Shown piece by piece: positions 6,378 through 33,600 of a DNA stretch of 64,000 bases (its first letter is position 1; each line of letters begins with the position of its first letter). Under the pieces are notes generated by a model that made no database searches, had not been told where the DNA came from, and worked only from the letters and a program-made list of their open reading frames with translations. Source of the DNA: Macrostomum lignano (Eukaryota); contig NIVC01000926.1 of the NCBI GenBank assembly GCA_002269645.1, positions 310,001 to 374,000 on the forward strand. Reading direction: 5' to 3'. The position numbers were made by a program, and so were the translations under genes.

Positions 6378-6679
6378 CAAGCTGTTGAAACCCGCGGATT
6401 TTGAACCCGGGGAATTTCAATCCCCGGAACTACTTTTGCATGTATTCTGAAATCTAAGGTCATACACAAACAAAAACTTGTTAATAGTTAGTAGGATAGA
6501 GGTAGACATAAAATGGACACATTCGTTTAAAATTAGGATTTGAGGCAAACATTGATATTGTTGGCTGGGGTACTGCACAGAATGTCAGGCAATGTCTGTC
6601 TGACTCTAAAACATGTATTGGCAAACTCTGGCCTCTCCCTGACTCTCCCTATGTCCCTTGGATCCTTTAAAATTTCTAT

Positions 6680-7770: not shown

Positions 7771-7883
7771 GTCCGCACATAAGCTGGATTCTTTATCTGG
7801 CTTTTGAAGTAAAAGTCTGCCGATCCCTGCTTCGAAAGCAAGTTTGTGGGACGTACTACTCTCATCGGGGGGGGGGGGGGGGG

Positions 7884-7950
7884 CGTAGCCCAGCGGTCTA
7901 GCGCAGGCTCTGGTGTGCCAGCGACCCAGGCTCGATTCCAAGTGCAGTCA
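7884..7950 (+). other. tRNA-derived (SINE-head-like) sequence, non-functional
   Basis: A box TAGCCCAGCGG and B-box-like GGCTCGATTCC. A possible GTG loop sits in CTGG-TGTG-CCAG, but the acceptor stem does not pair. Preceded by a poly-G run. Confidence 0.45.
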
Positions 7951-12400: not shown

Positions 12401-14305
12401 TAGTCAAATTTAAAAAAATTTTTTTGCAAAATATCAAAAATGAAAAATGTTATAAGACTTTTACCTTTTAGTTTCTATATGTCAAAAATCCTGTTGTTAC
12501 AACCATAAGTGCCATTCAAGGTTTAATAGCATCTATACTAATGATGTATCTATATGAAACTTTATAAACATATTCTTGACAAAATAATCTTTCATTCAAA
12601 ATATTGGTTTAGTATATTCTATTATTAGATTTCATTTTATACGTAAAAATAGTCTGTCATGTTACAACCATAATTATATGGAATGGCCCACTATGTTTAA
12701 GGTGCCTTAACTTAGCTGGGCCCCTCACCAGCCAACCAGATCAAGTGGGTGTTGCGCATATATGACGTGGCAGTACCTTCTAAGCGAAAGCTTGTTAATT
12801 AATTAGTTATTATTCAATACAAAGATTAATTTTGTTATATTACAACAGGTGCTACGCCGAAGCAAACATCTTATACCAACTGTGGCTCGCCTATGCCTAA
12901 TTAGCACCTACTTAGAAGATGGCATTCGAATGTGGGTGCAGTGGTCTGATCAGGCTGAGTACATTCAGCACCAGTGGAATGCTCCGGCAGTTGCTGGGCA
13001 CAGTTTTGTAATTGCCAACATGGTTTTGCAACTGGCTGGCTGTGCTATGGTGCTGCTCCGGTGTCGCGTTGAAATTGCTTGCGCTATGCTGGCCTCTGTA
13101 CTGCTGCTGCAGTCTGTTGCCTACCAGATTCTGTGGGAGTCCAATTTTCTATTGAGAAATTTGGCCATTGGCGGTGGCGTTCTGCTTCTCTTTGTTGAGT
13201 CCAGGTGAGTGGCATTAGTTGGGAAAGATTGCTCCTTGACTAGCTGCTTATCTAAATGAAACAGATGCTGATAGAAAGTGACTCAATTGTGTAAAATTTC
13301 ACTCTTCTGAGTGGGATTTCACTGAAGGGGATTCCACTGATGTGGGGTTCTACTAATTGTTGATTCCACCATAGGGGAACTCAACTTAGGGGGGGATTCC
13401 ATTAAAAGGGAAGTTAAATTTGAAGGGAATTCTTCTAAGAGTTGATTCACTGAATGAGAATTCCACTGGAGGGGATATTTTCCACTAAAGGGGATATTCC
13501 ATCAGAGGGATATTCCACTGGAGGAGATATTCCACTGGAGGGGACATTCCACTGGAGGGGATATTCCACTGGAGGGGATATTCCACTGGAGGTGAATATT
13601 TCACTGTGTGGAAATATTTCGCTGTAGGTGAGGGGATATTCCACTAAAGAGGGATATTCCATTAAAGGGGATATTCCAATGGAGGGAATATTCCACTGGA
13701 TGGGGATATTCCACTGGAGGGGGAATATTCTACTTAAGGGAGATTCTACTGGAGGGTTCCACAGAGGGGATCCCACTGAAATCTTGTAACTCATGGATTT
13801 ATACTATGACGATTTGAGCGCCTAAATTCTGTCTAAGTTTTGCCTCAACAAGTTATTCCAATAACATAGCTGTACACTTACCTGTCTCCCCCCTGGCAGG
13901 GTGGAGGCCCGCTCCCTGTTTGCTGGATTGCCCAGCACAGGCGAAGGCGGCCGGCACCGCCGTTGGCTGCTGCTGTCTGGTCGCCTGCTGGTCCTGCTAA
14001 TGCTGGCCACCCTGGCCAGGTTTGACACCGCTGTCTACATGCTGAATTTCGGCATTGATCTGCTGCTAGTACTACTCATAGCAGTCGGTTATAAGACAAA
14101 ATTATGCGCACTGGCTGCTTCGTTGAAATTATTAATCATCAATTTGATTGCCAATCCCTGGTGGAGTTTGGCGGCTACGTCTACTAGGCGTGATGTGATG
14201 CGCTTCGACTTCTTCCAGACTATGTCGGTTATTGGCGGCCTGCTGCTTGTGGTGGCCGTGGGACCTGGCGGAGTCAGTCTGGACGAGAGGAAAAAACGAT
14301 TTTAA
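9404..14305 (+). CDS. SURF4: Surfeit locus protein 4 (Erv29/SURF4 ER cargo receptor), 274 aa; exons 9404-9466, 12849-13204, 13900-14305
   Basis: Exon 1 MSVYNKGKTDFLDNLEDIADK|gt matches the SURF4 AEDFADQ junction. Later motifs: ARLCLISTYLEDGIRMW, FLLRNLAIGGGVLLL, DFFQTMSVIGGLLLVVAVGPGGVSLDERKKRF with a C-terminal dibasic ER-retrieval motif. GT-AG junctions keep frame (phase 0, phase 2). Confidence 0.95.
10110..12689. mobile_element. TIR DNA element (outer host of a nested insertion) in SURF4 intron 1
   Basis: Left end GGCCCATTCCATATA, right end TATATGGAATGGCCC (one mismatch in the IR). Flanked by direct repeat ACTA (10106-10109 and 12690-12693). Subterminal GTTACAACCATA repeats lie near the right end. 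Confidence 0.55.
10350..12212 (-). mobile_element. Internally deleted MULE (Mutator-like) DNA transposon
   Basis: Inverted termini built of ~15-bp AAAAGGGCGACAGT repeats (10350-10450 vs 12127-12212). Minus-strand transposase remnant: EAAVWRAIQTVFPQASIRGCVFHYTQAVWRHIQQLG...ISVYRQ|AVRTNNDLESWH, with the MULE GCxFH and RTNNxxESW motifs. The 5' part of the gene is missing. Confidence 0.85.
13445..13790. repeat. ~18-20 bp minisatellite (GGGGATATTCCACTGGAG) in SURF4 intron 2
   Basis: Directly visible tandem units. Confidence 0.9.
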
Positions 14306-14444
14306 CATCTGTCATCGTGTGACTAAGGGATATGGTTTAGCTTGACTGCTTGCTCTGATGGGTATTTGTTTTTTGTAATTTGTGTATTCATTTTTGCTGC
14401 TTTTTTCAATTAGTTTCTTCAATCTACTTACCCCCTAATCCTCT

Positions 14445-15670
14445 CCTCTCTTCCCTCCCTTTCTGTCCTCTCCCCTCTCCCTCTCTTCTCCTTTCTTCCC
14501 TCTCTCTCTCTTCTCTCTCCTATCATCTCCCTCTCTTCTCTCTCCCCTCTCTCCCCTCTCCTCTCCCCTCTACTCTCCCCTCTCCTCTCCCCTCTCCTCC
14601 CCTCTCCCTCTCCTCTCCCCTCTCTCCCTCTCTTCTCCCGTCTCCCCTCTCTCCCTCTCTCCTCTCCTCTCCCCTCTCTCCCTCTCCTCTCCTCTCTCCT
14701 CTCCCCTCTCCCTCTCCTCTCCCCTCTCTCCCTCTCTCCCCTCTCTCCCTCTCTCCTCTCCTCTCCCCTCTCTCCCTCTCCTCTCCCCTCTCTCCCTCTC
14801 CTCTCCCCTCTCTCCCTCTCCTCTCCCCTCTCTCCCTCTCCTCTCCCCTCTCCTCTCCCCTCTCCTCTCCCCTCTCCCCTCTCTCCCTCTCTCCTCTCCT
14901 CTCCTCTCCTCTCCCCTCTCCCCTCTCTCCCTCTCTCCTCTCCTCTCCCCTCTCTCCCTCTCCTCTCCCCTCTCCCTCTCCTCTCCCCTCTCTCCCTCTC
15001 TCCCCTCTCTCCCTCTCTCCTCTCCTCTCCCCTCTCTCCCTCTCCTCTCCCCTCTCTCCCTCTCCTCTCCCCTCTCCTCTCCCCTCTCCTCTCCCCTCTC
15101 CTCCCTCTCCCTCTCTCCTCTCCTCTCCCCTCTCTCCCTCTCCTCTCCCCTCTCCTCTCCCCTCTCCCCTCTCTCCCTCTCTCCTCTCCTCTCCTCTCCT
15201 CTCCCCTCTCCCCTCTCTCCCTCTCTCCTCTCCTCTCCTCTCCTCTCCCCTCTCTCCCTCTCTCCTCTCCTCTCCTCTCCTCTCCCCTCTCCCCTCTCTC
15301 CCTCTCTCCTCTCCTCTCCTCCCCTCTCCCCTCTCTCCCTCTCTCCTCTCCTCTCCTCTCCTCTCCCCTCTCCTCTCCCCTCTCCCCTCTCCCCTCTCTC
15401 TCTCTCCTCTCCTCTCCCCTCTCCCCTCTCTCCCTCTCTCCTCTCCTCTCCTCTCCTCTCCCCTCTCTCCCTCTCTCCTCTCCTCTCCTCTCCTCTCCCC
15501 TCTCTCCCTCTCTCCTCTCCTCTCCTCTCCTCTCCCCTCTCCCCTCTCTCCCTCTCTCCTCTCCTCTCCTCTCCCCTCTCCTCTCCCCTCTCCCCTCTCT
15601 CCCTCTCTCCTCTCCTCTCCTCTCCTTTCCCCTCTCTCCCTCTCTCCTCTCCTCTCCTCCTCTCCCTCCT
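14445..15670. repeat. (CT/CCT)-rich microsatellite, pure pyrimidine tract of ~1.2 kb
   Basis: Almost exclusively C and T on the + strand; generates spurious ORFs on both strands. Confidence 0.95.
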
Positions 15671-17924
15671 CTTCGTACTCTCCAATTCTGTCTTGTCCGT
15701 TCCCCCTCTCTCTTCCTGTCACCATCTCTTTCCCTGAGAATTTTGCATCACGTATAGAAGTCACAGCTACTCAGAGCTATAAAATATGTTAACCCAATTT
15801 ATCAGTTTGATATAAATTCCTTAAATGGTAGTTTTATTTAGCAACATAATTTCTGACCTTCACCAACTGCAATCGACATCGGTCTCTGAATTCTCTAATT
15901 TAGCTCTCTTGCCAGATCATTAGTGCCATTAAAATAAAGATAATTAATAAATTATAAATTATAAAGCGCTTTGCTTCGTGTTAAAATAGGAATTTTACTC
16001 ATTTTACTACTTAATAACCACTTAATTGCGTCAGTAGAATGTTTAGCAAGTTTTGTCAGTTTTTTTATTTTGTCTTCCTAATATTATTAATAGAAATATT
16101 GTCAAGTTTTTGGTGCAATTTAGTTTTTTATTATCTATTTTATCCAATTCAGTTTACAGGTGTTGGGAGTGCTTTCTTGTACTTTATTTTATTCACCAGA
16201 TAAAAATGCACATTTAATGAATTTTCAATTATGCTTTTATAGATTTCATAGGTTCTTCATTTTTAGCTGCCACTGTGCCTTCGTAATTGTCTTGGGTCAC
16301 TTACAGTTATACTTTATTTCTTTTATTCTTGCATCTGTTTCAATGCTTTGTCAAGAAATTCCTCAGTGTACTTGTTTTGATCTGGTGCCAGCCAATAAAA
16401 GATGGTTCCATGCTAAAAAATTAATGCTATTTAATTATTTACATTACTGAATGGATGATTTTTTGGTTAATTTCTTTTTCAAAAAATTAATAAAATTGAT
16501 TGAGTCAGTGCACTCTGTTTTGAGTTGAAAAAAAAATAATTTTGCTTACTTATTTGAATTGCTGAAATTGTGAATTGGGCCTAAGATTCAACTCTGCTCA
16601 CCCGTAACTCTCCTATGTATGTATATCTTATTTTAAACCACTTTAAAGCTCACTTTCAGGGAGGTTATTGACATAGATTTTATTTTGCGGGATTTAATCG
16701 ATCACTTTCCCGGACATGTTGCAAGGATTATTGTATGTATCTAAATAAGCGAGTTTCTCTCTTCTCTTCCTTCGTGACTCAAGAAATTTCTTAATGAAAT
16801 TTTTCTATGGTCAGAATGTGGGGGCTTCGCCACCACACCCCATCACCAAATTCAACCATAGAAATACAAGTATGGCTCCAGGATTTATCTGAATACATCC
16901 CGCAGAATTAAAGTAGTTTAAATAAGATATTCTATGGGTTTTTCGGTCGGTATTTCACTTAATCACCTACCGACCTCAATCCCATAGAATATCTTATACA
17001 TAGGTTAATTTTAGGAATTCGAGAATTCCTTTTCAGGCACTGCCAATCATATTCAATCAATATTTCTACTTTCGTCTATGGTCAAAACACCGCGAATAGT
17101 CTGTGGCGCAGACACATGCAGAGCATTGAATTTAAGACACTAAGCAATTTAAACGAAAGTACGTACGGTCAAGTACTCAATTCAATCACTCAACTATAAC
17201 AAGTAACAGCCAAAAACAACACCTAAAAAGTTCTATAGCTAATCGTAAATCGTCATTTAGAATCAACAAAAGAAGCCAAGAAAGAGAAATAGCATTTTCC
17301 AAGCCAATTGAGCTTAGGAGCAAGCAATTTAATCCTTATTGGGAGAATCAAGCTCCATAGACCCCTCTCGGGTCGGGCCATAGACAATAAAAAGCAAGTC
17401 TTCAACAGCTTAATTCCCCTCCAAGGATTTAATTTCTTGCTCCTAGCCTCAATTGGCTTGAAAAATGCTATATTAAAGCTTTGAAGTTTAGCCAATCTTT
17501 CCTTTTCTTTCCTTTGCCACCAGTTTACACCATAGACATATTGTAGCATCCATCTCACTTGTAGGATCGCCCGCCCCATTGCTCGCTGATCTGGCGTCCT
17601 TTGCCCTTGGTGCTTGTAGATTTCTCATGAAACTGGCCCCTATTGAACATATTGTAAATTAGTAAACGCATATTTCGTTGCTGCGTGTTCATACGAGTAT
17701 GTCGGTTTTGACTATAAAGACAAAATCTCGGTAACAAAATGAACCAAAGTGATCGGGCCATAGGTGTAAACTGGCCAAGAACAGCATAAAGATCTACTTA
17801 GTAAGTAGTATACTGGAGTAAGTAGTAATACTAGAAGCATATTATTATGTTTCTTTTTTTCACATTCAGTCCCCGTTTGCTGATCGATGGTGCAGAGATA
17901 CGCCAATAAATCAACCAGTCGCCA

Positions 17925-19844
17925 ATGGTTGTCAAGAAGGTTGAGGCATTGGCGGCAATGCCTTCGGGCCCTCATCCGCAATTGATGTCTGCTCTGACAC
18001 GACTGCGCAGCCATTTGTCTCTGATGGCGCCGGTCTGTCTGGCGCCCTGTTGGCGCCAGGTTGTGCGCGGACTGCGGCGGATTAGAAGTCCGCGCCGACC
18101 GGAGAACCGAGTTCCAGGTGTGGCTGACGATCGAAAACTTGTGTTGGTCTTTTTCATGCAGCTTCACTATTGCTGTGTAAATTCTGAGACAGTTTAGAGT
18201 TCCTCCTTCTAGTCTAAACCTCAAAAATCGCCTCACAAACCACTCCAAGAATCGCCCACAAACCAGTTCCCTTCCAAAAATCGCCCCACAAACCACCCTA
18301 AGAATCGCACCACAAACCACTCCAAGAATCGCACCACAAACCACTCCAAGAATCGCACCACATACCACTCCAAGAATCGCCCCACAAACCACTCCAAGAA
18401 TCGCCCCACAAACCACCCTAAGAATCGCACCACAAACCACTCCAAGAATCGCCCACAAACCAGTTCCCTTCCAAAAATCGCCCCACAAACCACCCTAAGA
18501 ATCGCACCACAAACCACTCCAAGAATCGCACCACAAACCACTCCAAGAATCGCACCACATACCACTCCAAGAATCGCCCCACAAACCACTCCAAGAATCG
18601 CCCCACAAACCACCCTAAGAATCGCACCACAAACCACTCCAAGAATCGCACCACAAACCACTCCAAGAATCGCCCCACATACCACTCCAAGAATCGCCCC
18701 ACAAACACTCCAAGAATCGCCCCACAAACCACTCCAAGAATCGCCCCACAAACACTCCAAGAATCGCCCCACAAACCACTCCAAGAATCGCCCCACAAAC
18801 ACTCCAAGAATCGCCCCACAAACCACTCCAAGAATCGCCCCACAAACACTCCAAGAATCGCCCCACAAACCACTCCAAGAATCGCCCCACAAACCACTCC
18901 AAGAATCGCCCCACAAACACTCCAAGAATCGCCCCACAAACCACTCCAAGAATCGCCCCACAAACACTCCAAGAATCGCCCCACAAACCACTCCAAGAAT
19001 CGCCCCACAAACCACTCCAAGAATCGCCCCACAAACCACTCCAAGAATCGCCCCACATACCACTCCAAGAATCGCCCCACAAACCACCAAGAATCGCCCC
19101 ACAAACCACTCCAAGAATCGCCAGAAAATCACTTATTCGGGACTCGAACCCGGGACCTTCCGCACGCCTAGGCGACTCAATTGACCGCTCTGCCCCTGCC
19201 AAAGCCAATCATTGCCAGTCGCGAATTATCTATTTTTCGATAATGAATTGATTTTACCTCCAGATCCTCTCCAAGCCTGTGCCATTGCAAGCGACGGCAG
19301 CTTATCAACTGATCGGATTCAACAGCCGCTGTACACCACGGCCTTGGCACTTGCCGGGGTGCCTCGGACAGTTCCGTCCGACCACCTTGTGGCCGACATT
19401 GGCTGCGGCCCGGTGGCTCGGCTGCCGCCCGAACTACCAGTGCTGGGCCTGGATCTCTGCTTGCCTGCCGATTTTAACCAACAACAACAACAACAAAGAC
19501 CAACAAAGACCCTGTTAGCTGGCAATTGCTATTATCAGGTCCGCTGCGATCTGACTAAGCAGCAATGGCCTGTCAGGCGTGGGATAGCTGACTCGGCAGT
19601 CTCAGTGTCTGCGATGCAGTGCCTGCTAACCGGGGGACAATCAATGGCCTTTGTTTTGTTAAGCAATGCTACAGGAATTGTCAGACCCGGTGGTTTAACT
19701 GTTATGCAGTTCTATCCTACTGGTGTGGAACAGGTTGCCATGGTGATGAATGCCGCCGCGCTAACTGATAGGCCGCATATGTTGGTGAACTGTCGGCCGG
19801 TGTTGAACAGAGGTGTGAAATTGTTTCTTGTCCTGGTGGCTTGA
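17925..19844 (+). CDS. Divergent BUD23/WBSCR22-like class I SAM-dependent methyltransferase, 257 aa; exons 17925-18117, 19264-19844
   Basis: Splicing CCAG|gtgtgg...ctccag|ATCC (phase 1) gives RRPENRVPDPLQ...DRIQQPLYTTALAL. Then VADIGCG, LGLDL, DL...WPVRRGIADSAVSVSAMQCL, VRPGGLTVMQFYP..VEQVAMV, KLFLVL. This is co-linear with BUD23 (RRPE...IQ...ALELL, [50 protein letters not shown]). The start codon is uncertain. Confidence 0.8.
18230..19122. repeat. 23-24 bp minisatellite (AAGAATCGCCCCACAAACCACTCC) in the methyltransferase intron
   Basis: Tandem units visible; responsible for the CGAILGVV and GRFLEWFV ORFs. Confidence 0.95.
19136..19206 (-). other. tRNA-derived Pol III-type head (SINE-like)
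   Basis: Minus strand reads GGCAGAGCGG (A-box-like) ... CCGGGTTCGAGTCCCG (T arm / B box). No complete cloverleaf. Confidence 0.55.
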
Positions 19845-19859
19845 TGTGAACCGGTGTTT

Positions 19860-20645
19860 CTCTGCTTTTGGATGGAGTGTCTTCTGCTTTTAGTTTGGGG
19901 TGTCTTCTGCTTTTAGATTGGAGTGTCTTCTGCTTTTAGTTTGGGGTTTCTTCTGGTTTTAGATTGAAATGTCTTCTGCTCCTAGATTGGAGTGTCTTCT
20001 GCTTTAAACCTGGAGTGTCTGCTGCTTTTAGCTTGGATTTTCTTCTGCTTTTAGCCTGGGGTGTCTTCTGCTTTTAGATTGGGGTTTCTTCTGCTTTTAG
20101 ATTGGAGTGTCTTCTGCTTTTAGTTTGGGGTTTCTTCTGGTTTTAGATTGAAATGTCTTCTGCTCCTAGATTGGAGTGTCTTCTGCTTTAAACCTGGAGT
20201 GTCTTCTGCTTTAAACCTGGAGTGTCTTCTGCTTTTAGATTGAGTGTCTGCTGCTTTTAGCTTGGATTTTCTTCTGCTTTTAGCCTGGGGTGTCTTCTGC
20301 TTTTAGATTGGGGTTTCTTCTGCTTTTAGCCTGGGTGTCTTCTGCTTTTAGATTGGGGTGTCTTCTGCTTTTAGCCTGGGGTGTCTTCTGGTTTTAGATT
20401 GGGGTGTCTTCTGCTTTTAGCCTGGGTGTCTTCTGCTTTTAGATTGGGGTGTCTTCTGCTTTTAGCTTGGGGTGTCTTCTGCTTTTAGATTGGGGTGTCT
20501 TCTGCTTTTAGATTGGGGTGTCTTCTGCTTTTAGATTGGGGTGTCTTCTGCTTTTAGATTGGGGTGTCTTCTGCTTTTAGATTGGGGTGTCTTCTGCTTT
20601 TAGATTGGGGTGTCTTCTGCTTTTAGATTGGGGTGTCTTCTGCTT
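19860..20645. repeat. 23-bp minisatellite (GGGGTGTCTTCTGCTTTTAGATT)
   Basis: Tandem array starting about 15 bp after the methyltransferase stop. Confidence 0.95.
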
Positions 20646-21212
20646 TAAACGAGGGTGCGCTTTCTTAGGCAATCAGGCAGTCATTGATATAGAGCTTTTA
20701 TTGGATATAATGTTTCATTATTTTGTTCTGTGCTACAACTAATGCATTTCGCACCTGGGTTACAATATCTGTGCAAATTGCTTGTAAATAAAATAAATAA
20801 GTGCTGGTAGATCCATCGTTTCTACGTGTGATTTCTCGCCACAGAGAAAAGCTTGCACTGGCAGTGCATTTTGTTCGTTTCTAATTTCATAGCGATGACA
20901 AATGCAAACCCTAAAAATAATTTGTTTATACTTGAAGTAGCTTATTCGATTGGCAAAAACTTTTAATTTCTCTCAACAACACAGGAAGCCAGTTTTTCTA
21001 ACAGCTGTTTACGTAGATTAAGATAAACTCATCATGGATTTCATGTAGGTCTTTCTGTGTGTGTGCGTGTGTGGCGCCGCTCTTCCGTCTATATATACAT
21101 GGATATGTAACAAATAAGTGCAGATATAAAATCGTATAATATCGTTTCTTAAAGCGAAAGTTTTCCCTGCAATTATCGTTTATTCAACACAATTGCCTTA
21201 GCGATAGCCAAG

Positions 21213-22794
21213 ATGAAGAGGCTGTTTGCCTGTACCTGCTGGTCGTCAGGGCGACAGAAACGAGGTGGCTTCGATGTTGGCGACTGCGACACTGCTGGAT
21301 CTCAGCAGGTGTTTTCGACCGTTACTAATGTACGTGTTAATGCAGGTTAATGTGTTAATGTGTTAATGCACGTGTTAATGTACTAATGTACGTGTAATGC
21401 AGGTGTTTTCGACCGTTACTAATGGTGCTAATTTAGGCCTGAGTTGGTGAGCGTTAATCGCATGTATTGTATACGTAGAAACAAAGAAGATTTTCAAGGT
21501 ATTAATATTATTGATATTATTATTATCGAAAAATTGAAAAATTAATTATTACTCTTGTGCGAAAATGGCACCGAATACTACAGGGCAGTTGCTATTTATA
21601 AATTAAACAGACAGAAGCCATTACCAGGTACATGTATCTCACATACTTGTACATGTACAGTCGACAGTATGCTGCATCCTTTCTTATGCGTGTTTCCTAA
21701 ATTGCATTTCAATAAAACAAAACGTTTTTTAGTTCACAGAAGACATGCACACCGCCATCCGCACCGAGTGCTCAGGAGGCCACCATCAGCAGAAGCAGCC
21801 GGCGCCGTTATGCTCTGGTATTTTGCTTCTTTCACCAACAATTTGAATCGACAAGCAGTTCGGCTGCACAACGCGCCGCTCGTGACCTGCTTCGAGGTCT
21901 CGGCTTTATCACGCACTCGTTTTTTAATCTCGATAAGTTGGATGACATCCTGAGCGAGCTTCGGGCAGGTGAGAACTCTGTGGGGGGCACTGTGCTAGTC
22001 CACAATACTAAATTTTTGCCTAGTACATGGGCGATCATTTGGCACTCCTTTATCATCTAGATTAAATTGGCACTCCTTTATCATCTAGATTAGCACACCT
22101 TTATCGTCTAGATTAAATTGGCACTCCTTTATCATCTAGATTAGCACACCTTTATCGTCTAGATTAAATTGGCACTCCTTTATCATCTAGATTAGCACAC
22201 CTTTATCGTCTAGATTAAATTGGCACTCCTTTATCATCTCGATTAGCACACCTTTCGCATCATCTAGATTAGAATTTCGTGATTCATTATTCTACCAATC
22301 CTATTTTCCTACTTATAGTAGACAGTGTGGAACACAGCCAGACAGACTGTCTAGCCGTGATGCTGCTACTGCACAGGTCCGCCCCTGCCATCGCCCAGAT
22401 TTCTGCCAATCCCGCCGCCCTGCTCCAGCCGCTCATCGACTGCTGCAGCCTCAACGGGAAGCCGAAAATTTTGCTAATTTTGCAACACGACGAAACTGAA
22501 AACCCGAATGCTCTGCTGCCAATGGATCATTTGAGTAGTGCAGTTCGCCTGAACAAAGATTTATTTATCCATTACGGCTACTCCCTAGAGACTGCGGAAT
22601 CTGGTGACGATTGCTGCGGTTGTTTGAAGGTTTTGAAGGCTCTGGCGAATCGAATCACGGCAGATCCGCATCGGATTGATCTCCCGGCTTGCCTGTCGCA
22701 TGCAGCTAAAGACGTGCAGCAACAGGAAGAGGAACAAATCTGCACTACGCGCGTGTTTTCGTCTCTTAGTAGAGACTTGATCTTTGTTGATTGA
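21213..22794 (+). CDS. Caspase-fold (peptidase C14-like) pseudoenzyme, 266 aa; exons 21213-21308, 21740-21968, 22319-22794
   Basis: GT-AG junctions in frame (phase 0, phase 1). RRYALVF...DLLRGLGFITHSFFNL...EHSQTDCLAVMLLLH...CSLNGKPKILLI...KDLFIHY...SSLSRDLIF follows the caspase p20/p10 pattern. QACRG is replaced by LQHDE. Confidence 0.8.
22035..22265. repeat. ~51-bp tandem repeat (GGCACTCCTTTATCATCTAGATTAGCACACCTTTATCGTCTAGATTAAATT), about 4 copies, in caspase-like intron 2
   Basis: Directly visible. Confidence 0.9.
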
Positions 22795-23464
22795 TGCCGC
22801 AAAAATTCGCACTTAATCAAGGACTAAATTCGTAGAGTAGAAATTGATTATTTTTATTGACTAATAAAAAAAATTAAAATCACAGCAAACGATGCGTTAT
22901 TTTGCTAGAAAGCATTTTTAATATCAATACATAATCAACTGTTCTTTTTTGTTTATTTAACTCTTCAAAAGATTTAGTCAGTATCATTGCTGTATAAAAC
23001 AGACAAGATTATAAGCGCGGAATTTTCTGGAACAGAGCTAAAGAAACAGATCCGAGGGAAGGGGATTTGGGGTGGCTTTCAATTCAAGCATTTCAAAACA
23101 AACCAGAAATTCTGACACCAGATAGCAATGAGGCTTACTGTGAAGAGACAAAAATACGGCAAAGAATAGCTACTAAAATACTTTTTTATTTACTGGCTAA
23201 ACAGCGCAGAAAATGAAAACACGCGCCGCTAATATATTGACTGGCATAAAAAATTAGCAATACATGTTTAGTTTTTAGCACTTTGACTTGTCTTTGGACC
23301 AAAATAAACCTGGATTACAGCGAAGAGGTTTGGTAAATAAAATCGCAGAACTGAAGCAGCAGTACATGGCGGCGTTTTGATGTGAGAATACAGCTGGAAT
23401 TTTTTGTAATTGCTGTTTAAACCGTGTCATTTCTTAGATTTAAAGCCGTGGACTAAATGGATGG

Positions 23465-23838
23465 CTGGTGGGGGTTAGAATTGGCTGGCTGTGGGGTGGG
23501 GGTTAGGATTGGCTGGCTGTGGGGTGGGGGTTAGGATTGGCTGGCTGTGGGGTGGGGTTAGGATTGGCTGGCTGTGGGGTGGGGGTTAGAATTGGCTGGC
23601 TGTGGGGTGGGGGTTAGGATTGGCTGGCTGTGGGGTGGGGGTTAGAATTGGCTAGCTGTGGGGTGGGGGTTAGAATTGGCTGGCTGTGGGGTGGGGCTTG
23701 GATTTGATTGGTTGTGGTGTGGGGTTAGAATTGGCTGGCTGTGGGGTGGGGGTTAGAATTGGCTAGCTGTGGGGTGGGGGTTAGAATTGGCTGGCTGTGG
23801 GGTGGGGTCAGAACCAGCTGGCTGTGGGGGCGGGGCAA
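23465..23838. repeat. 28-bp G-rich minisatellite (GGGGTGGGGGTTAGAATTGGCTGGCTGT)
   Basis: About 13 tandem units between the converging caspase-like and hexokinase 3' ends. Confidence 0.9.
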
Positions 23839-24687: not shown

Positions 24688-27600
24688 TCAGACCAGAGCA
24701 GCAATAGCAGCCGCCCCTTTGCCGCTGCCGTCCTCTGACAGCTTCAGGGTGAACTGCAATTCAATGCAAGAGGGCTTTCCATTGTGTATTCTGGGAATAA
24801 AATCGGTGATTGTCTGAGAAGATCCAAGCCTTTTTATACATTGGATCTGCTGAAGTGTCTTGAGCATAGAATTATGAATCCAGGTATTTAGACTTGGGAT
24901 TTACAAGTTACAACTTAAAATCGGGATTTAAATGTCTGACATCGGGATTCAAGTACTGAGAATCGGGATTCAGGTACTGAGAATCGGGATTCAGATACTG
25001 AGAATCGGGATTCAGATACTGAAACTCGGGATTCAGGTACTGAAACTCGGGATTCAGATACTGAAACTCGGGATTCAGGTACTGAGAATCGGGATTCAGA
25101 TGCTGAAAATCAGGATTCAGGTACTGAGAATCGGGATTCAGATGCTGAAAATCAGGATTCAGGTACTGAGAATCGGGATTCAGATGCTGAAAATCAGGAT
25201 TCAGGTACTGAGAATCGGGATTCAGATGCTGAAAATCAGGATTCAGGTACTGAGAATCGGGATTCAGATGCTGAAAATAAGGATTCAGGTACTGAGAATC
25301 GGGATTCAGATGCTGAAAATAAGGATTCAGGTACTGAGAATCGGGATTCAGATGCTGAAAATCAGGATTCAGGTACTGAGAATCAGGATTCAGATGCTGA
25401 AAATCAGGATTCAGGTACTGAGAATCGGGATTCAGATGCTGAAAATCAGGATTCAGGTACTGAGAATCGGGATTCAGATGCTGAAAATCAGGATTCAGGT
25501 ACTGAGAATCGGGATTCAGATGCTGAAAATCAGGATTCAGGTACTGAGAATCGGGATTCAGATGCTGAAAATCAGGATTCAGGTACTGAGAATCGGGATT
25601 CAGATGCTGAAAATCAGGATTCAGGTACTGAGAATCGGGATTCAGATGCTGAAAATAAGGATTCAGGTACTGAGAATCGGGATTCAGATGCTGAAAATAA
25701 GGATTCAGGTACTGAGAATCGGGATTCAGATGCTGAAAATCAGGATTCAGGTACTGAGAATCGGGATTCAGATGCTGAAAATCAGGATTCAGATGCTGAG
25801 AATCGGGATTCAGATGCTGAAAATCAGGATTCAGGTACTGAGAATCGGGATTCAGATGCTGAAAATAAGGATTCAGGTACTGAGAATCGGGATTCAGATG
25901 CTGAAAATAAGGATTCAGGTACTGAGAATCGGGATTCAGATGCTGAAAATAAGGATTCAGATGCTGAGAATCGGGATTCAGATGCTGAAAATCAGGATTC
26001 AGGTACTGAGAATCGGGATTCAGATGCTGAAAATCAGGATTCAGGTACTGAGAATCGGGATTCAGATGCTGAAAATCAGGATTCAGGTACTGAGAATCGG
26101 GATTCAGATGCTGAAAATCAGGATTCAGGTACTGAGAATCGGGATTCAGATGCTGAAAATAAGGATTCAGGTACTGAGAATCGGGATTCAGATGCTGAAA
26201 ATCAGGATTCAGGTACTGAGAATCGGGATTCAGATGCTGAAAATCAGGATTCAGGTACTGAGAATCGGGATTCAGATGCTGAAAATCAGGATTCAGGTAC
26301 TGAGAATCGGGATTCAGATGCTGAAAATCAGGATTCAGGTACTGAGAATCGGGATTCAGATGCTGAAAATCAGGATTCAGGTACTGAGAATCGGGATTCA
26401 GATGCTGAAAATCAGGATTCAGGTACTGAGAATCGGGATTCAGATGCTGAAAATCAGGATTCAGGTACTGAGAATCGGGATTCAGATGCTGAAAATCAGG
26501 ATTCAGGTACTGAGAATCGGGATTCAGATGCTGAAAATCAGGATTCAGATGCTGAGAATCGGGATTCAGATGCTGAAAATCAGGATTCAGGTACTGAGAA
26601 TCGGGATTCAGATGCTGAAAATCAGGATTCAGATGCTGAGAATCGGGATTCAGATGCTGAAAATCAGGATTCAGGTACTGAGAATCGGGATTCAGATGCT
26701 GAAAATCAGGATTCAGGTACTGAGAATCGGGATTCAGATGCTGAAAATCAGGATTCAGGTACTGAGAATCGGGATTCAGATGCTGAAAATCAGGATTCAG
26801 ATGCTGAGAATCGGGATTCAGATGCTGAAAATCAGGATTCAGGTACTGAGAATCGGGATTCAGATGCTGAAAATCAGGATTCAGGTACTGAGAATCGGGA
26901 TTCAGATGCTGAAAATCAGGATTCAGGTACTGAGAATCGGGATTCAGATGCTGAAAATAAGGATTCAGGTACTGAGAATCGGGATTCAGATGCTGAAAAT
27001 CAGGATTCAGATGCTGAGAATCGGGATTCAGATGCTGAAAATCAGGATTCAGGTACTGAGAATCGGGATTCAGATGCTGAAAATAAGGATTCAGGTACTG
27101 AGAATCGGGATTCAGATGCTGAAAATCAGGATTCAGGTACTGAGAATCGGGATTCAGATGCTGAAAATCAGGATTCAGGTACTGAGAATCGGGATTCAGA
27201 TGCTGAAAATCAGGATTCAGGTACTGAGAATCGGGATTCAGATGCTGAAAATCAGGATTCAGGTACTGAGAATCGGGATTCAGATGCTGAAAATCAGGAT
27301 TCAGGTACTGAGAATCGGGATTCAGATGCTGAAAATCAGGATTCAGGTACTGAGAATCGGGATTCAGATGCTGAAAATCAGGATTCAGGTACTGAGAATC
27401 GGGATTCAGATGCTGAAAATCAGGATTCAGGTACTGAGAATCGGGATTCAGATGCTGAAAATCAGGATTCAGATGCTGAGAATCGGGATTCAGATGCTGA
27501 AAATAAGGATTCAGGTACTGAGAATCGGGATTCAGATGCTGAAAATAAGGATTCAGGTACTGAGAATCGGGATTCAGATGCTGAAAATCAGGATTCAGGT

Positions 27601-30600
27601 ACTGAGAATCGGGATTCAGATGCTGAAAATCAGGATTCAGATGCTGAGAATCGGGATTCAGATGCTGAAAATCAGGATTCAGGTACTGAGAATCGGGATT
27701 CAGATGCTGAAAATCAGGATTCAGATGCTGAGAATCGGGATTCAGATGCTGAAAATAAGGATTCAGGTACTGAGAATCGGGATTCAGATGCTGAAAATAA
27801 GGATTCAGGTACTGAGAATCGGGATTCAGATGCTGAAAATCAGGATTCAGGTACTGACAGGGAATCCTATTTGTTTCACCAGGAACCGACACTGGTCCCG
27901 CCCCACCCCACCTCCCCTACAAGTTGAGGCCCAAGCCTTCGAGCCTTCGAGACGCGGGAGCTTTTGTGAGTAAACCCTTCCTTGTAGGGAGGGTTCCCAC
28001 AAATGGGGACGAAAAATAAGGACATCGAAGTTTATGTGCACAGTAAAAAACTGAATGGGCAGGAGATCCTCGCTGCGCTCCTGTGTACGAGTTCGTGAAA
28101 CAAAGAGCCTTTCCTGGGGGACGGAAGTGCATAGGAAAACTAATGTGCGTTCTTCCCTCACACTGTACTCTACTGCATATTATTCACTGTTCTTTGCCCC
28201 TATATACATTGCGAGTTTGTCTCGAAGGGCACTGACTCGCAGTCTTCTAAATTCCACTCTATCGCATTTTGAAACTACCTGATCGTTCCCACTATGGGCT
28301 ACAAGTGCTGCGTTCCTCTGCGTCATCAACTATGCTCGCTATGAGAAGAATCCAACCGTGACTATCCACAAGTTTCCATCATCTACGCAGTTGGAGCTCC
28401 TGAATAAGTGGATCACGGCCATTCCAAGCGTGTGGACCGATTCCGAGTTGGAGCAGCTGAGAACAAACCCGAACCACAGCTACAGGGTCTGCTCGCTTCA
28501 CTTCCCTGAGAAGTACTTCGTGATCAACTCTCAGGACTCCAATCCCCACCGCAAACGGACCGAAGCAGATGGTCAGCCTGCAGGCAAGCTAAAGCTTCGG
28601 CGTCTAGCCGCTGATGCCCTGCCTTGCATCTTCCCAAATGCACCCTCCTACCTGAACAAGACCATCACTGAGGAGCGCCCCACTCAGCTGGCATCGGCCG
28701 AGACCCGCCGGGAGAACGACACGAGGCGGTGCGAGGAAGAAGCAACAGCGACAGAATCCGACAAACCTGGAGAAGACAAACGTCCAGCACGATACCAATG
28801 TTTTCAGCGAGTCCACAGTGGAGGCTGCCAAGTTCCACAGGTTTCCCATCGGTCTGATCACCTTACAGCTCATTCTGAGTCTGTGGACGATGTGGAATGT
28901 TAGGACCACGAAGAAGGCAAAGGAGAAGCGGCTTCCGGACGCTGCTCCGTTGGTTGTAAATGATCCAAGGCTCTCAAAGCTGCGCCAGTTTGCCACTTTT
29001 TTTCATCGATGGGAGAAGTCAAAGCTGCCTGGCTTGACTGCTCCTACATTCTTAGCCGTGAGATCCTGCTGCCTCACTCTTGCTGACCTCACAGAGCACC
29101 TGTTGGCCAAGCATTCGTTTCCTTCCGTTTTGACAGGCTGCATTGTCAGCGATTGGATTGAGCGCCGCTTCGGTCGCTACCGCCAATTTCACGGTGGCAA
29201 CTTCTTCATTTCCGTGCGTCAGATCTTTCAGGCGGAGAAGATCCGCATCTCGATCTTGCTCAAGTTTCATGGACTTAAGCTGAGGGACTTTCAAATTCTT
29301 TATCAAGGAAATCCGTCTGACTTCTCAAGCCAACTGTTGTCTTTGTCGCTGCCTGGCCTGGAGCATCTGAGTGCTGCTCTTTCATCAACTGATCTGAACC
29401 TGTGCTCCTATCTTGGTGGGTATGTCGCGAAGTCTCTGTGTGGTCAGCTGAAGTGCCAGGATTGCAGGAACTTCCTGGTCACTGCCGACTATTTGGAGTT
29501 CCTAATCCTATCCGATGATGAGGCCCGCGCTGAGGATTTTGCCTTGATCCAGATGCGTGATCGTTGTGGTCTGAAGTGCCCCAGTGACTTCTTGTTTCTT
29601 TTAATGAAGGTATCCTACTTCGTGTTCGGCCACCTGAAGGATAAGAGTTTGCTGACTGCTGATCTGCTGTACTCAGGAGGAGCCGTTCAGAGTATCGTGG
29701 AGCTCTACCAAGATTGCATCAGCAGATCCGGTGAGTTCCGCGACATGCTGAAACAGAAGTGTCCTTGCGGAAGACCTGGGGTTATTTTCTCCTCCAGGAT
29801 CCTCACCCCAGCAGTCAAGAATCTATCTGAAGAATTTCATGAATGAGACCAACGACAACTTGAAGAACGAGAAAGCTTTAAAGAGAAAGAAGGTAAAGTT
29901 ATCGGGTGAGTGAGTCTGTCTGTAGTCCTACTGGAGTCAATGAGTCTTGAAGAATTGCTTTTCAGTGGGAGTTCTTGCCTGTCATTTGCCAGTGCAATGG
30001 AGGATTTTTATATTGATTTATTCTCCAAAATTGAGCAATATAGAACATATATATTAAATTAATGCAGCGAATATTTTCTTCGAAACTGTCTTAACTATTT
30101 TTGTTTACTTCTTTTCAACGATTTCTTATGCGAAAGGCATGCTAACCAGGCAAGAAATTGGGGGAATGGGGAGGGGACTTGGGCCTCAACTTGTAGACCC
30201 CATTTTTCAGTGTCGCTTCCTGGGGAGCGCAGCGAGCCAATAGGATTCCCTGGTACTGAGAATCGGGATTCAGATGCTGAAAATCAGGATTCAGATGCTG
30301 AGAATCGGGATTCAGATGCTGAAAATCAGGATTCAGGTACTGAGAATCGGGATTCAGATGCTGAAAATCAGGATTCAGGTACTGAGAATCGGGATTCAGA
30401 TGCTGAAAATCAGGATTCAGGTACTGAGAATCGGGATTCAGATGCTGAAAATCAGGATTCAGGTACTGAGAATCGGGATTCAGATGCTGAAAATCAGGAT
30501 TCAGGTACTGAGAATCGGGATTCAGATGCTGAAAATCAGGATTCAGGTACTGAGAATCGGGATTCAGATGCTGAAAATCAGGATTCAGGTACTGAGAATC

Positions 30601-33600
30601 GGGATTCAGATGCTGAAAATCAGGATTCAGGTACTGAGAATCGGGATTCAGATGCTGAAAATCAGGATTCAGGTACTGAGAATCGGGATTCAGATGCTGA
30701 AAATCAGGATTCAGATGCTGAGAATCGGGATTCAGATGCTGAAAATCAGGATTCAGGTACTGAGAATCGGGATTCAGATGCTGAAAATCAGGATTCAGGT
30801 ACTGAGAATCGGGATTCAGATGCTGAAAATCAGGATTCAGGTACTGAGAATCGGGATTCAGATGCTGAAAATCAGGATTCAGATGCTGAGAATCGGGATT
30901 CAGATGCTGAAAATCAGGATTCAGATGCTGAGAATCGGGATTCAGATGCTGAAAATCAGGATTCAGGTACTGAGAATCGGGATTCAGATGCTGAAAATCA
31001 GGATTCAGGTACTGAGAATCGGGATTCAGATGCTGAAAATCAGGATTCAGGTACTGAGAATCGGGATTCAGATGCTGAAAATCGGGATTCAGCTGATACA
31101 TTTCTCAAGCTATAAAAGGGCAGCAAAAAGCGCCTCAAGTTCACCTCGTAATCGGGGCACAATTCCTGCACTTTGCGTGTCATTCGCTCGGGAAAGTGCG
31201 GATGAAACTTGAACAGCGATCCGTCGATGCCAACAGTCACGTGACCGCTAGGCTTAATCCGTTTCAACAACGAGGCGATGCCCGTAGCAACCAGAAAAGC
31301 GGACCTGGTCGAAACGGCCTCGCAAATGCTCCGAACGATGACAGCTTCGATGGGATGGACAAGCTTCAAGCCCAAGTCAACAGTGAGCAGCTGGTCCGTG
31401 CTGTAGTAGTGCTTTGGCGGATCTCTCTCAATCTCGCTCAGGTATTTGGTCAGAAAGGTCATGGGCTGTACAAGGGACTCGGGCATGCGGCCGCCAAATA
31501 TGATGCCATCATCCACTAGGGATTTGATAGCTAAGCGAACTATTTCGCCAAGGTACATGCCGCTGATGAGCTTCTCGAACACCTGAGTTGGAAAGGAATG
31601 GGGGGTGTTCGAACAGGCTTATTAAGTAACATAAATACAAATTTGGAAAGTAGAAACAAACATCCCCACAGTAGAATCCCATATCCAAAAGTACTCAGAA
31701 AAACTTAAATCTCCACAGTAGAATCCCTAATCCCAAAGTAGAATCCCACATCCCAACATTAGAATACCACATCCCTAGGGTAGAACCCCACATCCCTACA
31801 GTAGAATCCCACATCCCTACGGTAGAATCCCACATCCCTACAGTAGAATCTCACATCCATACGGTAGAATCCCACATCCCTACAGTAGAATCTCACATCC
31901 ATACGGTAGAATCCCACATCCCTACAGTAGAATCTCACATCCCTACGGTAGAATCCCACATCTCTACAGTAGAATCCCACATCCCTACAGTAGAATCCCA
32001 CATCCCTACGGTAGAATCCCACATCCCTAGGGTAGAATCCCACATCCCTACAGTAGAATCCCACATCCCTACAGTAGAATCTCACATCCATACGGTAGAA
32101 TCCCACATCCCTACAGTAGAATCTCACATCCCTACGGTAGAATCCCACATCCCTACAGTAGAATCTCACATCCCTACGGTAGAATCTCATCCCTACGGTA
32201 GAATCCCACACCCCTACAGCAGAATCCCACATCCCCACAGCAGAATCCCGTACAGCGAAGAGGTTAAATGGGGACATACCAAATCCCCGCAGTGGAATCC
32301 TAAACTACACGCACCTGAAACCCCGGATTAAGACTCTTCTTATCGATCTCCCTATCAAAGTCGGTTTGGAACCGGTCCAAGCAGCCGTCGGCTCCGAAGT
32401 TGCCCCACTCTGTGTTGACAACCACCGGACCGTCCGGGCCGCCGTCGGACACTCCGGCCAGACTGTCCGAGTACCGCTCCATAGACGAGCGTCTCTCAAC
32501 GTAGGCGGCATTGGAGCCCGTGCCAACGATGGCTGCAATTTGGCAGCGAGGATCTTCCAGGGCGCAGGAGGCCAGCGTGCCGACCGTGTCGTTGACCAGA
32601 GCGACGCAGACGATCGGCAAAGCTGCCTTGTCGATGGCTTCCTGGAAAGTTTGCCGGATTTAACTAAATGTTTACTAGTAATCGAGATCCCAGTTCAGAC
32701 CCTGTTGATCCCGATTCTGACCCTATTGATCCCGATTCTGATCCTGTTGATCCCGATTCTGATCCTGTTGATCCCGATTCTGATCGTGTTTATCCCGTTT
32801 CTGATCCTGTCGATCCCGATTCTGATCCTGTTTATCCCGATTCTGATCCTGTTTATCCCGATTCTGATCCTTTTTATCCCGATTCTGATCCTGTTTATCC
32901 CGATTCTGATCCTTTTTATCCCGATTCTGATCCTGTTTATCCCGATTCTGATCCTGTTTATCCCGATTCTGATCCTGTTGATCCCGATTCTGATTATTGA
33001 TCCCGATTCTAATGTTATTGATCCCGATTCTGATCCTGTTGATCCCGATTCTGATTATTGATCCCGATTCTGATCCTGTTGATCCCGATTCTGATCCTGT
33101 TGATCCAGATTCTGGCCGTGTTGATCCAGATTCTGGCCCTGTTGATCCCGATTCTGATCCTGTTTATCCCGATTCTGATCCTGTTTATCCCGATTCTGAT
33201 CCTGTTTATCCCGATTCTGATCCTTTTTATCCCGATTCTGATCCTTTTTATCCCGATTCTGATCCTGTTTATCCCGATTCTGATCCTGTTGATCCCGATT
33301 CTGATTATTGATCCCGATTCTAATGTTATTGATCCCGATTCTGATCCTGTTGATCCCGATTCTGATTATTGATCCCGATTCTGATCCTGTTGATCCCGAT
33401 TCTGATCCTGTTGATCCAGATTCTGGCCGTGTTGATCCAGATTCTGGCCCTGTTGATCCCGATTCTGATCCTGTTGATCCCGATTCTGATGTTATTGATC
33501 CCGATTCTGATCTCGTTGATCCCGATTCTGATCCTGTTGATCCCGATTATGACCCTGTTGATCCCGATTCGGACCCTGTTGATCCCGATTCTAATCATAT

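What the first reader, a model, noticed from the sequence alone, without database searches (positions are those of the whole stretch)
21213..22794. Intact pseudo-caspase with no prodomain and an N-terminal Cys-x-Cys/basic motif
The three-exon, stop-free 266-aa model is not visible in the ORF track as one protein. The catalytic His position is retained (LLLHR vs LLSHG), but the nucleophile motif QACRG is replaced by LQHDE. The S1 Arg motifs (RxGT in p20, SWR in p10) are absent and the p20-p10 linker is short. The N-terminus MKRLFACTCWSSGRQKRGG has clustered Cys and basic residues and no DED/CARD (seen). Catalytically dead caspase homologs such as cFLIP regulate active caspases by heterodimerisation (knowledge). 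Inference: a lineage-specific, possibly palmitoylated, membrane-anchored caspase regulator or decoy.
Basis: partly seen in the sequence, partly recalled or inferred. Interest (0 to 1): 0.7.

Follow-up and report, generated by a model that had tools for sequence, protein, structure and literature searches.

The report
Flatworm caspase look-alike without active site
This is a real gene of the flatworm Macrostomum lignano for a caspase-shaped protein that has lost the residues needed to cut proteins; such dead caspases are known elsewhere, this one is already in databases unnamed, and the copy in this window has an extra 94-base repeat in its first exon that may break it.

Summary
The motif observations hold. 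A GT-AG, stop-free 266-aa model exists at 21213-21308 / 21740-21968 / 22319-22794. It is a caspase homologue (Pfam Peptidase_C14 E 5e-4; PDB caspase-6 E 3e-6; AlphaFold model matches only caspases). The catalytic His is kept, the Cys is replaced by His (LQHDE), both S1 arginines are lost, and there is no prodomain.

Two claims need correction.

- **Not unannotated.** The window is Macrostomum lignano. A 98-99% identical copy is GenBank PAA89807.1 (BOX15_Mlig030275g2, from an RNA-derived annotation). The window's own exons 1-2 are UniProt A0A1I8G143, "CASPASE_P20 domain-containing protein".
- **"Intact" is conditional.** The RNA-derived model joins exon 1 to exon 2 at other sites (donor 21447, acceptor 21733). 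Relative to it, the window carries a 94-nt repeat expansion in exon 1 with an in-frame TAA at 21348.

Constraint looks weak. The two copies differ by 8 non-synonymous and 2 synonymous changes (dN/dS 1.2), and no orthologue turned up in 1.84 billion representative proteins.

The most likely reading is a lineage-restricted, non-catalytic caspase decoy or modulator, possibly decaying in this recently duplicated genome. Palmitoylation and membrane anchoring remain untested. It is a new member of a known kind, of modest interest.

The parts
21189..21190 (+). Position matching the inferred SL trans-splice acceptor of the L001 copy. L001 has AG at 9998-9999, directly before the 5' end of its RNA-derived CDS. 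The window reads AC here and has a new TTAG at 21197-21200.
   Evidence: Alignment. CDS start at L001 10001. 5' ends in that annotation are defined by trans-splicing reads (PMC5730564). That this site is the acceptor is an inference.
21213..21308 (+). Exon 1, first part: ATG to CAG|GT, coding MKRLFACTCWSSGRQKRGGFDVGDCDTAGSQQ. It holds a Cys-x-Cys plus basic cluster and DVGD/DCD motifs.
   Evidence: One substitution (F5L) separates it from L001. There is an upstream in-frame TAA at 21150-21152.
21309..21402 (+). 94-nt insertion relative to the L001 copy, made of GTTAATG/TAATGTACGTG-type repeats. It is bracketed by a perfect 26-nt direct repeat (21305-21330 and 21399-21424). It starts GT, ends AG, and carries an in-frame TAA at 21348-21350.
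21403..21446 (+). Exon 1, second part by homology to PAA89807.1 (VFSTVTNGANLGLS plus TG). It is followed by the donor TTG|GTGAGC.
   Evidence: This stretch is 100% identical to L001.
21447..21732 (+). Intron 1 as used in the RNA-derived model of the L001 copy. It ends ttttttag.
   Evidence: Divergence from L001 is 2.5%.
21733..21968 (+). It codes the disordered Ser/Pro-rich tail and the start of the caspase domain: RRRYALVFCFFHQQFE...DKLDDILSELRA.
   Evidence: The Pfam match starts here.
21969..22318 (+). Intron 2 (GTGAGA...TTATAG). It contains a 51-nt tandem array at 22042-22255 whose copy number differs from L001.
22319..22794 (+). Exon 3: the rest of the p20-like part, the short linker, the p10-like part and the TGA stop. 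Retained His is CAC 22372-22374 (LLLHR). LQHDE is at 22480-22494, with His (CAC 22486-22488) in place of the nucleophile Cys. ESG replaces SWR.
22863..22868 (+). AATAAA, the likely polyadenylation signal, about 70 nt after the stop codon.
   Evidence: Sequence. Its function is inferred.

Best explanation
Shown:
- This is one of at least two near-identical copies of a Macrostomum lignano gene.
- It encodes a short-prodomain, effector-type caspase-fold protein.
- The protein has lost the Cys nucleophile (now His), the oxyanion/S1 Gln-Arg-Gly context and both S1 arginines. It keeps the fold-defining core: DHS..DC, the catalytic-position His, GKPK, and the C-terminal QxP..SxLxRxLxF strand.
- It cannot be an Asp-directed cysteine protease.
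- The sister copy is annotated from RNA evidence.

Inferred:
- The protein most likely acts, if it acts at all, as a non-catalytic partner of active caspases. It would pair through the conserved dimer-interface strand and so damp or tune their activation, as cFLIP(L) and the dipteran decoy caspases do.
- Its N-terminal extension is disordered. That extension carries a Cys-x-Cys/basic cluster that could be lipidated, and DxxD motifs that could be caspase-cleaved.
- Constraint now looks weak in this recently duplicated genome.
- The window's copy carries a 94-nt repeat expansion in exon 1. This either truncates the protein after 45 residues or must be spliced out. The copy may therefore be the degenerating duplicate.
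For: Identity and expression:
- The GenBank annotation is RNA-derived: StringTie/TACO, trans-splice and poly(A) reads, then TransDecoder (PMC5730564).

Caspase homology:
- Pfam gives 20.2 to 23.5 bits. PDB caspase-6 gives E 2.9e-6.
- The AlphaFold2 domain has pLDDT of about 80-90, and the top 50 Foldseek PDB hits are all caspases, E about 1e-9, target-normalised TM 0.6-0.73.
- Residue-by-residue loss of the catalytic and S1 residues is seen.

Long-term coding constraint:
- The frame is open across about 285 codons and three exons with canonical splice sites, despite only about 20-25% identity to any caspase.
- A neutral sequence of that length would stay stop-free with probability of roughly 1e-6. 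This figure is my own estimate, (61/64)^285.

Weak recent constraint and the insertion:
- dN/dS, exon versus non-coding divergence, and the 94-nt insertion are.

Precedent:
- The pseudo-caspase mechanism is described in PMC7586951. Dipteran decoy caspases are cited in PMC3141678.
Against: - No binding partner, localisation or phenotype is known.
- dN/dS between the two copies is 1.23. Values of 0.2 or below are rejected at P of about 0.01, which fits loss of function as well as it fits a decoy.
- No orthologue was found in other flatworms or anywhere else, so conservation cannot be shown.
- The structure prediction used an alignment made only of caspases, so the fold match is not fully independent of the sequence match.
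- RNA reads cannot be assigned here to the window's copy rather than the L001 copy.
Confidence: 0.5

Rival explanations
1. Decaying gene. A duplicated effector caspase lost its catalytic residues and is now drifting neutrally. It is still transcribed, perhaps only because it sits downstream in a trans-spliced unit, but it has no function. The window's copy is already a pseudogene because of the exon-1 insertion.
For: - dN/dS is 1.23, from 8 non-synonymous and 2 synonymous changes, plus a 6-nt indel near the last beta-strand.
- Exon divergence (1.0-1.3%) is only modestly below intron and flank divergence (0.8-2.5%).
- The 94-nt insertion puts a TAA in frame under the RNA-derived splice pattern.
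- The AG at the inferred trans-splice site is lost in the window.
- No orthologues were found.
Against: - The L001 copy has an uninterrupted frame of about 285 codons with canonical introns, although it is only about 20-25% identical to caspases. That is not expected after long neutral drift.
- The hydrophobic core and structural motifs are kept, and the domain is predicted to fold confidently.
- Ten substitutions between near-identical copies give little power. At short time-scales dN/dS is inflated by slightly deleterious variants (established population-genetic knowledge).
Confidence: 0.3
2. An intact 266-aa protein is made from the 21308>21740 junction, is palmitoylated on Cys7/Cys9, and works at a membrane as a caspase regulator.
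For: - The junction is in frame with GT-AG borders.
- An independent automatic gene model (UniProt A0A1I8G143) chose the same junction.
- The Cys-x-Cys plus RQKR cluster is conserved in both copies.
- N-terminal Cys clusters next to basic residues are typical S-acylation sites (general knowledge).
Against: - The RNA-derived model of the sister copy reads straight through the same CAG|GTGTTT sequence. It uses the first AG (21731-21732), not the second (21738-21739).
- A0A1I8G143 is a truncated automatic model, and I found no transcript behind it.
- There is no evidence of any kind for acylation.
Confidence: 0.12
3. Neofunctionalised caspase fold with a role unrelated to caspase control. One example would be a metal- or ligand-binding scaffold that uses the His/His pair and the many nearby cysteines (DCCS, DDCCGC).
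For: The nucleophile was replaced by His rather than by a random residue. The catalytic-position His is kept. The protein is unusually Cys-rich around the former active site.
Against: This rests on composition only. No similarity to any metal-binding family was found, and the residues cannot be shown to be conserved beyond two near-identical copies.
Confidence: 0.08

Closest known systems
Effector caspases (caspase-3/-6/-7; Sf-caspase-1; drICE), MEROPS family C14A
   Same: - It has the same fold and the same order of p20-like and p10-like parts, and a short non-domain N-terminus.
- These are the best sequence matches (caspase-6, E 2.9e-6) and the best structural matches.
- DHS..DC, the catalytic-position His, GKPK and the C-terminal QxPxxxSxLxRxLxF are all conserved.
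   Different: - Cys is replaced by His at the nucleophile.
- QACRG has become LQHDE, and SHG has become LHR.
- The p20 Arg loop is deleted, SWR has become ESG, and the linker and the loop before the last strand are shortened.
- Identity is only about 20-25%.
cFLIP(L) / CFLAR, the vertebrate pseudo-caspase
   Same: It has a caspase-like domain without the catalytic Cys. cFLIP(L) regulates procaspase-8 by heterodimerising through the pseudo-catalytic domain (PMC7586951). This is the mechanistic model for the present protein.
   Different: - cFLIP is recruited by tandem DEDs, and none are present here.
- cFLIP derives from caspase-8/-10, whereas this protein resembles effector caspases.
- FADD was not detected in platyhelminths and DED caspases are missing from the parasitic ones (PMC11463336).
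Dipteran caspase-like decoy molecules (Bryant et al. 2010, PMC2902568, cited in PMC3141678)
   Same: These are short-prodomain, enzymatically inactive caspase paralogues. They arose by lineage-specific duplication and modulate a paralogous active caspase. This is the closest analogy in architecture.
   Different: The decoys have a recognisable active paralogue next of kin. Here no close active paralogue was found: the best non-self hit is 32% identical and comes from an insect. I did not read the primary paper.
GenBank PAA89807.1 (BOX15_Mlig030275g2) and UniProt A0A1I8G143 (CASPASE_P20 domain-containing protein), Macrostomum lignano
   Same: These are the same gene. PAA89807.1 is a copy 98-99% identical at DNA level, with the same exon 2/3 structure.
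   Different: PAA89807.1 lacks the 94-nt insertion, has 8 amino-acid differences and a 2-residue insertion, and is named only 'hypothetical protein'. A0A1I8G143 stops after exon 2.

Membership tests
Caspase fold / Peptidase_C14 (Pfam PF00656) | Significant sequence match to the family profile | tested here: met
   P0001 scores 23.5 bits against a cut-off of 21.4. The window's version scores 20.0-20.2 bits, E about 5e-4, just below the cut-off. PDB caspase-6 gives E 2.9e-6.
Caspase fold / Peptidase_C14 (Pfam PF00656) | Caspase/hemoglobinase alpha-beta sandwich with p20-like and p10-like halves | tested here: met
   The AlphaFold2 domain has pLDDT of about 80-90. The top 50 PDB matches are all caspases, target-normalised TM 0.6-0.73. 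Caveat: the alignment used for the prediction consisted of caspases.
Active caspases (C14A) | Catalytic Cys in the QACxG pentapeptide | tested here: not met
   The pentapeptide is LQHDE, with His at the Cys position.
Active caspases (C14A) | Catalytic His in the SHG motif | tested here: met
   The His of LLLHR aligns with the SHG His. The following Gly is Arg.
Active caspases (C14A) | S1 pocket for Asp: Arg of the p20 RxG(T/S) loop, Gln of QACxG, and Arg of the p10 SWR | tested here: not met
   The p20 loop is deleted, Gln is replaced by Leu, and SWR is replaced by ESG.
cFLIP-type pseudo-caspase | Tandem death effector domains N-terminal to the pseudo-caspase domain | tested here: not met
   No Pfam domain lies outside C14. 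N-terminal residues 1-74 of P0001 have pLDDT below 50. An in-frame stop lies upstream of the ATG.
Pseudo-caspase / decoy caspase (functional class) | Caspase-like domain that lacks the nucleophile | tested here: met
Pseudo-caspase / decoy caspase (functional class) | Binds and modulates an active caspase | not testable with these tools
   No multimer prediction or experiment was available.
Pseudo-caspase / decoy caspase (functional class) | Maintained by purifying selection | tested here: inconclusive
   The open frame is kept despite about 22% identity to caspases. Against that, dN/dS is 1.23 on 10 changes between the two copies, and no orthologues were found.
Pseudogene | Frame-disrupting lesion | tested here: inconclusive
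   The L001 copy has none. In the window's copy a 94-nt insertion gives a TAA under the RNA-derived splice pattern. Three GT-AG splicing options would restore the frame: 21308>21403, 21329>21403 and 21308>21740.
Pseudogene | Not transcribed | tested here: not met
   The sister copy's model comes from an annotation built on RNA-seq and a transcriptome assembly (PMC5730564). Copy-specific expression of the window's locus was not testable.

The most novel reading that the evidence does not exclude
Reading A: the 94-nt exon-1 insertion is a newborn intron, present in one gene copy and absent in the other. It was made by tandem duplication of an AG|GT-containing exon segment: a perfect 26-nt repeat brackets an insert that starts GT and ends AG. 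If it is spliced, the mRNA returns to exactly the sister copy's sequence.

Reading B: the protein is a functional, lipid-anchored, caspase-cleavable decoy that tunes cell death in a regenerating flatworm. FADD has not been found in platyhelminths, so the extrinsic cell-death pathway appears to be missing there.

The probability and interest scores below are for reading A.
Probability: 0.15. Interest if true: 0.6.

Novelty: new member of a known kind. Interest (0 to 1): 0.3.

Why it matters
- **Comparative value.** If functional, this would be a flatworm example of a short-prodomain pseudo-caspase, alongside vertebrate cFLIP and the dipteran decoys. It would add to evidence that dead caspase paralogues are recruited repeatedly as regulators. 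FADD was not detected in platyhelminths and DED caspases are missing from the parasitic ones (PMC11463336), so how caspase activation is tuned there is open.
- **Experimental tractability.** M. lignano has RNAi and transgenesis, so the idea is testable.
- **Annotation.** The gene is a concrete correction. PAA89807.1 is an unnamed 'hypothetical protein' and A0A1I8G143 is truncated.
- **Caution on gene models.** In this repeat-rich, recently duplicated genome, frame-driven models can hide lesions that differ between copies.

Tried and rejected
- **Prodomain exon upstream: rejected.** An in-frame TAA lies at 21150. The sister copy's RNA-derived CDS begins 21 nt before the ATG, right after an AG.
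- **Other caspase-like genes in the window: none**.
- **Orthologues or paralogues: none found.** The word-indexed search gave only PAA89807.1. The full HMMER scan of 1.84 billion representatives gave 7 hits at E 1e-3 or better: A0A1I8G143 plus six arthropod multi-domain caspases at 30-35% identity.
- **Direct RNA evidence via exact-protein look-up: not obtained.** A0A1I8G143 is not on record.
- **Literature: nothing on this gene.** The gene identifier gave 0 papers. The lophotrochozoan caspase survey mentions only an M. lignano caspase with a kinase-like prodomain and no pseudo-caspase.
- **Rfam on the whole window: no hits**.
- **cFLIP orthology: rejected.** There are no DEDs, and the best matches are effector caspases.
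- **Upstream gene as a methyltransferase: not claimed.** A DIGCGP...MQFYP motif suggested it, but Pfam found nothing.

Full report
**What is in the sequence**

I enumerated GT-AG combinations around the given coordinates. Exons 21213-21308, 21740-21968 and 22319-22794 give 801 nt and a stop-free 266-aa protein starting MKRLFACTCWSSGRQKRGG. An in-frame TAA at 21150-21152 closes the frame upstream, and 21213 is the first ATG after it.

**Is it a caspase homologue?**

Yes, but a very divergent one.
- Pfam Peptidase_C14 matches residues 55-165 at E 5e-4 and 20.2 bits. This is just below the curated 21.4-bit cut-off.
- phmmer against all PDB sequences returns caspase-6 first, at E 2.9e-6, followed by other caspases.
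- Arthropod caspase domains find exon 3 by tblastn at about E 1e-5, and find nothing else in the 64 kb.
- I aligned the protein with 11 canonical caspase domains and ran AlphaFold2. The domain scores pLDDT about 80-90, and the first 74 residues of P0001 score below 50.
- Foldseek against the PDB returns only caspases in the top 50: caspase-7, -6, -3, Spodoptera caspase-1 and drICE. E is about 1e-9 and target-normalised TM is 0.6-0.73.
- The structure result is not fully independent, because the alignment was built from caspases. The sequence hits are independent.

**Residue-level claims**

The HMMER alignment to caspase-6 and the multiple alignment agree.
- The His of LLLHR aligns with the SHG His. 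The Gly that follows is Arg.
- KPKILLILQHDE aligns with KPKIFIIQACRG. So Gln becomes Leu, Ala becomes Gln, Cys becomes His, Arg becomes Asp and Gly becomes Glu.
- The p20 loop that carries the S1 Arg (RxGT) is deleted.
- The p10 SWR is ESG.
- The linker and the loop before the last strand are shorter than in canonical caspases.
- Fold-defining motifs are kept: DHS..DC, GKPK and the C-terminal QxP..SxLxRxLxF.
- No DED, CARD or other domain is found.

The protein cannot be an Asp-specific cysteine protease.

**Whose gene it is**

The only close hit among 5.8 billion proteins is GenBank PAA89807.1, "hypothetical protein BOX15_Mlig030275g2, partial", from Macrostomum lignano. Its locus is contig NIVC01000137.1, fetched here as L001. 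It is collinear with the window over the flanking genes, and 98-99% identical through this gene. The two are alleles or recent duplicates. The DV1 assembly is known to hold about 180 Mb of duplicated blocks at 95% identity or more (PMC5730564).

That GenBank annotation is RNA-derived. It was built from StringTie/TACO assemblies of RNA-seq, a de novo transcriptome, trans-splice and poly(A) reads for the transcript ends, and TransDecoder.

A full HMMER scan of 1.84 billion representatives found seven hits at E 1e-3 or better.
- One is UniProt A0A1I8G143, "CASPASE_P20 domain-containing protein", from M. lignano.
- The other six are insect and mite multi-domain caspases at 30-35% identity.

So the caspase nature had already been flagged automatically for a truncated model. 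No orthologue was found outside M. lignano, and no close active paralogue either.

**The gene model**

- Exon 1 reads through CAG GTG TTT, continues ...QQVFSTVTNGANLGLS, and ends at the donor TTG|GTGAGC (window 21446/21447).
- Exon 2 starts at the first AG after the T-run (ttttttag|, window 21733), giving ...S-C-SQKTCTPP.

Relative to that copy, the window has 94 extra bases at 21309-21402.
- They consist of GTTAATG/TAATGTACGTG-type repeats.
- They are bracketed by a perfect 26-nt direct repeat at 21305-21330 and 21399-21424.
- With the RNA-derived splice sites this insertion shifts the frame and places a TAA at 21348-21350. The product would be 45 residues long.

Three GT-AG options would restore the frame.
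- 21308>21403 removes exactly the 94 nt and gives a 283-aa protein collinear with PAA89807.1.
- 21329>21403 uses the donor AAT|GTACGT. It removes a 73-nt intron and leaves VFSTVTN duplicated.

It also needs the second AG rather than the first. "Intact" is therefore unproven for this copy.

In addition, the AG that directly precedes the 5' end of the sister copy's CDS is AC in the window (21189-21190). I infer that this AG is the spliced-leader acceptor. A new TTAG lies 10 nt downstream in the window.

**Selection**

Between the two copies there are 8 non-synonymous and 2 synonymous substitutions, plus one in-frame 6-nt indel.
- Nei-Gojobori dN/dS is 1.23.
- A dN/dS of 0.2 or below is rejected at P of about 0.01. 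A value of 0.5 is not rejected.
- Exons differ by 1.0-1.3%. Introns and flanks differ by 0.8-2.5%, with one 60-nt stretch at 6.7%.

However, ten changes between near-identical copies carry little weight.

In the other direction, the frame is open over about 285 codons and three canonically spliced exons, although identity to any caspase is only about 20-25%. That is very unlikely under long neutral drift. My rough estimate is (61/64)^285, about 1e-6. The gene was therefore held as coding for most of its history. Whether it still is cannot be decided here.

**Mechanism**

Shown: a transcribed caspase-fold protein without catalytic or S1 residues, without an adaptor domain, and with a disordered N-terminal extension of about 65-75 residues, depending on the splice model.

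Inferred: the most economical function is non-catalytic pairing with active caspases through the retained dimer-interface strand.
- cFLIP(L) does this with procaspase-8 (PMC7586951).
- Dipteran decoy caspases are reported to do it with a paralogue (Bryant et al. 2010, cited in PMC3141678).

The N-terminal Cys7-x-Cys9 next to RQKR is compatible with S-acylation. DVGD and DCD at residues 21-26 are compatible with caspase cleavage. Both are conserved in the two copies, but this is pattern-matching only.

The protein is not a cFLIP relative. It has no DEDs, and its best matches are effector caspases. FADD was not detected in platyhelminths and DED caspases are missing from the parasitic ones (PMC11463336).

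The main rival is a decaying duplicate with no function. I put it at about 0.3.

**Verdict**

- The word "intact" and the exact junction are not established.
- The functional interpretation is plausible but untested.
- This is a new, uncharacterised member of a known kind (pseudo-caspases), already present in databases under uninformative names.
- Interest is modest.
- The most unusual feature is the copy-specific exon-1 insertion. It has the geometry expected for intron gain by tandem duplication. That reading is speculative until junction reads are checked.

Noticed in passing
window 21309-21402 (flanking repeats 21305-21330 and 21399-21424): The copy-specific 94-nt insertion starts GT, ends AG, and is bracketed by a duplicated 26-mer that contains AG|GT. 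This is the geometry proposed for intron gain by tandem duplication. Splicing it out would restore the sister copy's mRNA exactly.
   Followed up: partly
window 21189-21200 vs L001 9998-10010: The AG just before the 5' end of the sister copy's RNA-derived CDS is AC in the window. I infer that this AG is the spliced-leader acceptor. A C-to-G change creates a new TTAG 10 nt downstream in the window.
   Followed up: no
window 17925-19844 (+), L001 7100-8896: An upstream gene on the same strand is annotated as 256 aa in L001 and has no Pfam hit. It probably has two exons (about 17925-18197 and 19212-19844), with a tandem array of about 24 nt filling the intron (18222-19122). It contains a DIGCGP...MQFYP motif. 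It may share a trans-spliced transcription unit with the caspase-like gene.
   Followed up: partly
window 20011-20646; 22042-22255; 23467-23829: Three tandem arrays lie around the gene: 23 nt x 27.8 copies between the two genes, 51 nt x 4.2 copies inside intron 2 (copy number differs from L001), and 28 nt x 13 copies downstream. They are typical of this repeat-rich genome and are the main source of difference between the two copies.
   Followed up: no
window about 24916-31092 (-), L001 13390-20519: The collinear region corresponds to a hexokinase gene (Pfam Hexokinase_1/2 in the L001 annotation). Large internal tandem arrays there are only 83-87% identical between the copies.
   Followed up: no
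window 4001-8000 and 14001-16000: These blocks have extreme strand asymmetry (GC skew -0.4 to -0.7, AT skew -0.4 to -0.6). They are presumably long simple or tandem repeats.
   Followed up: no
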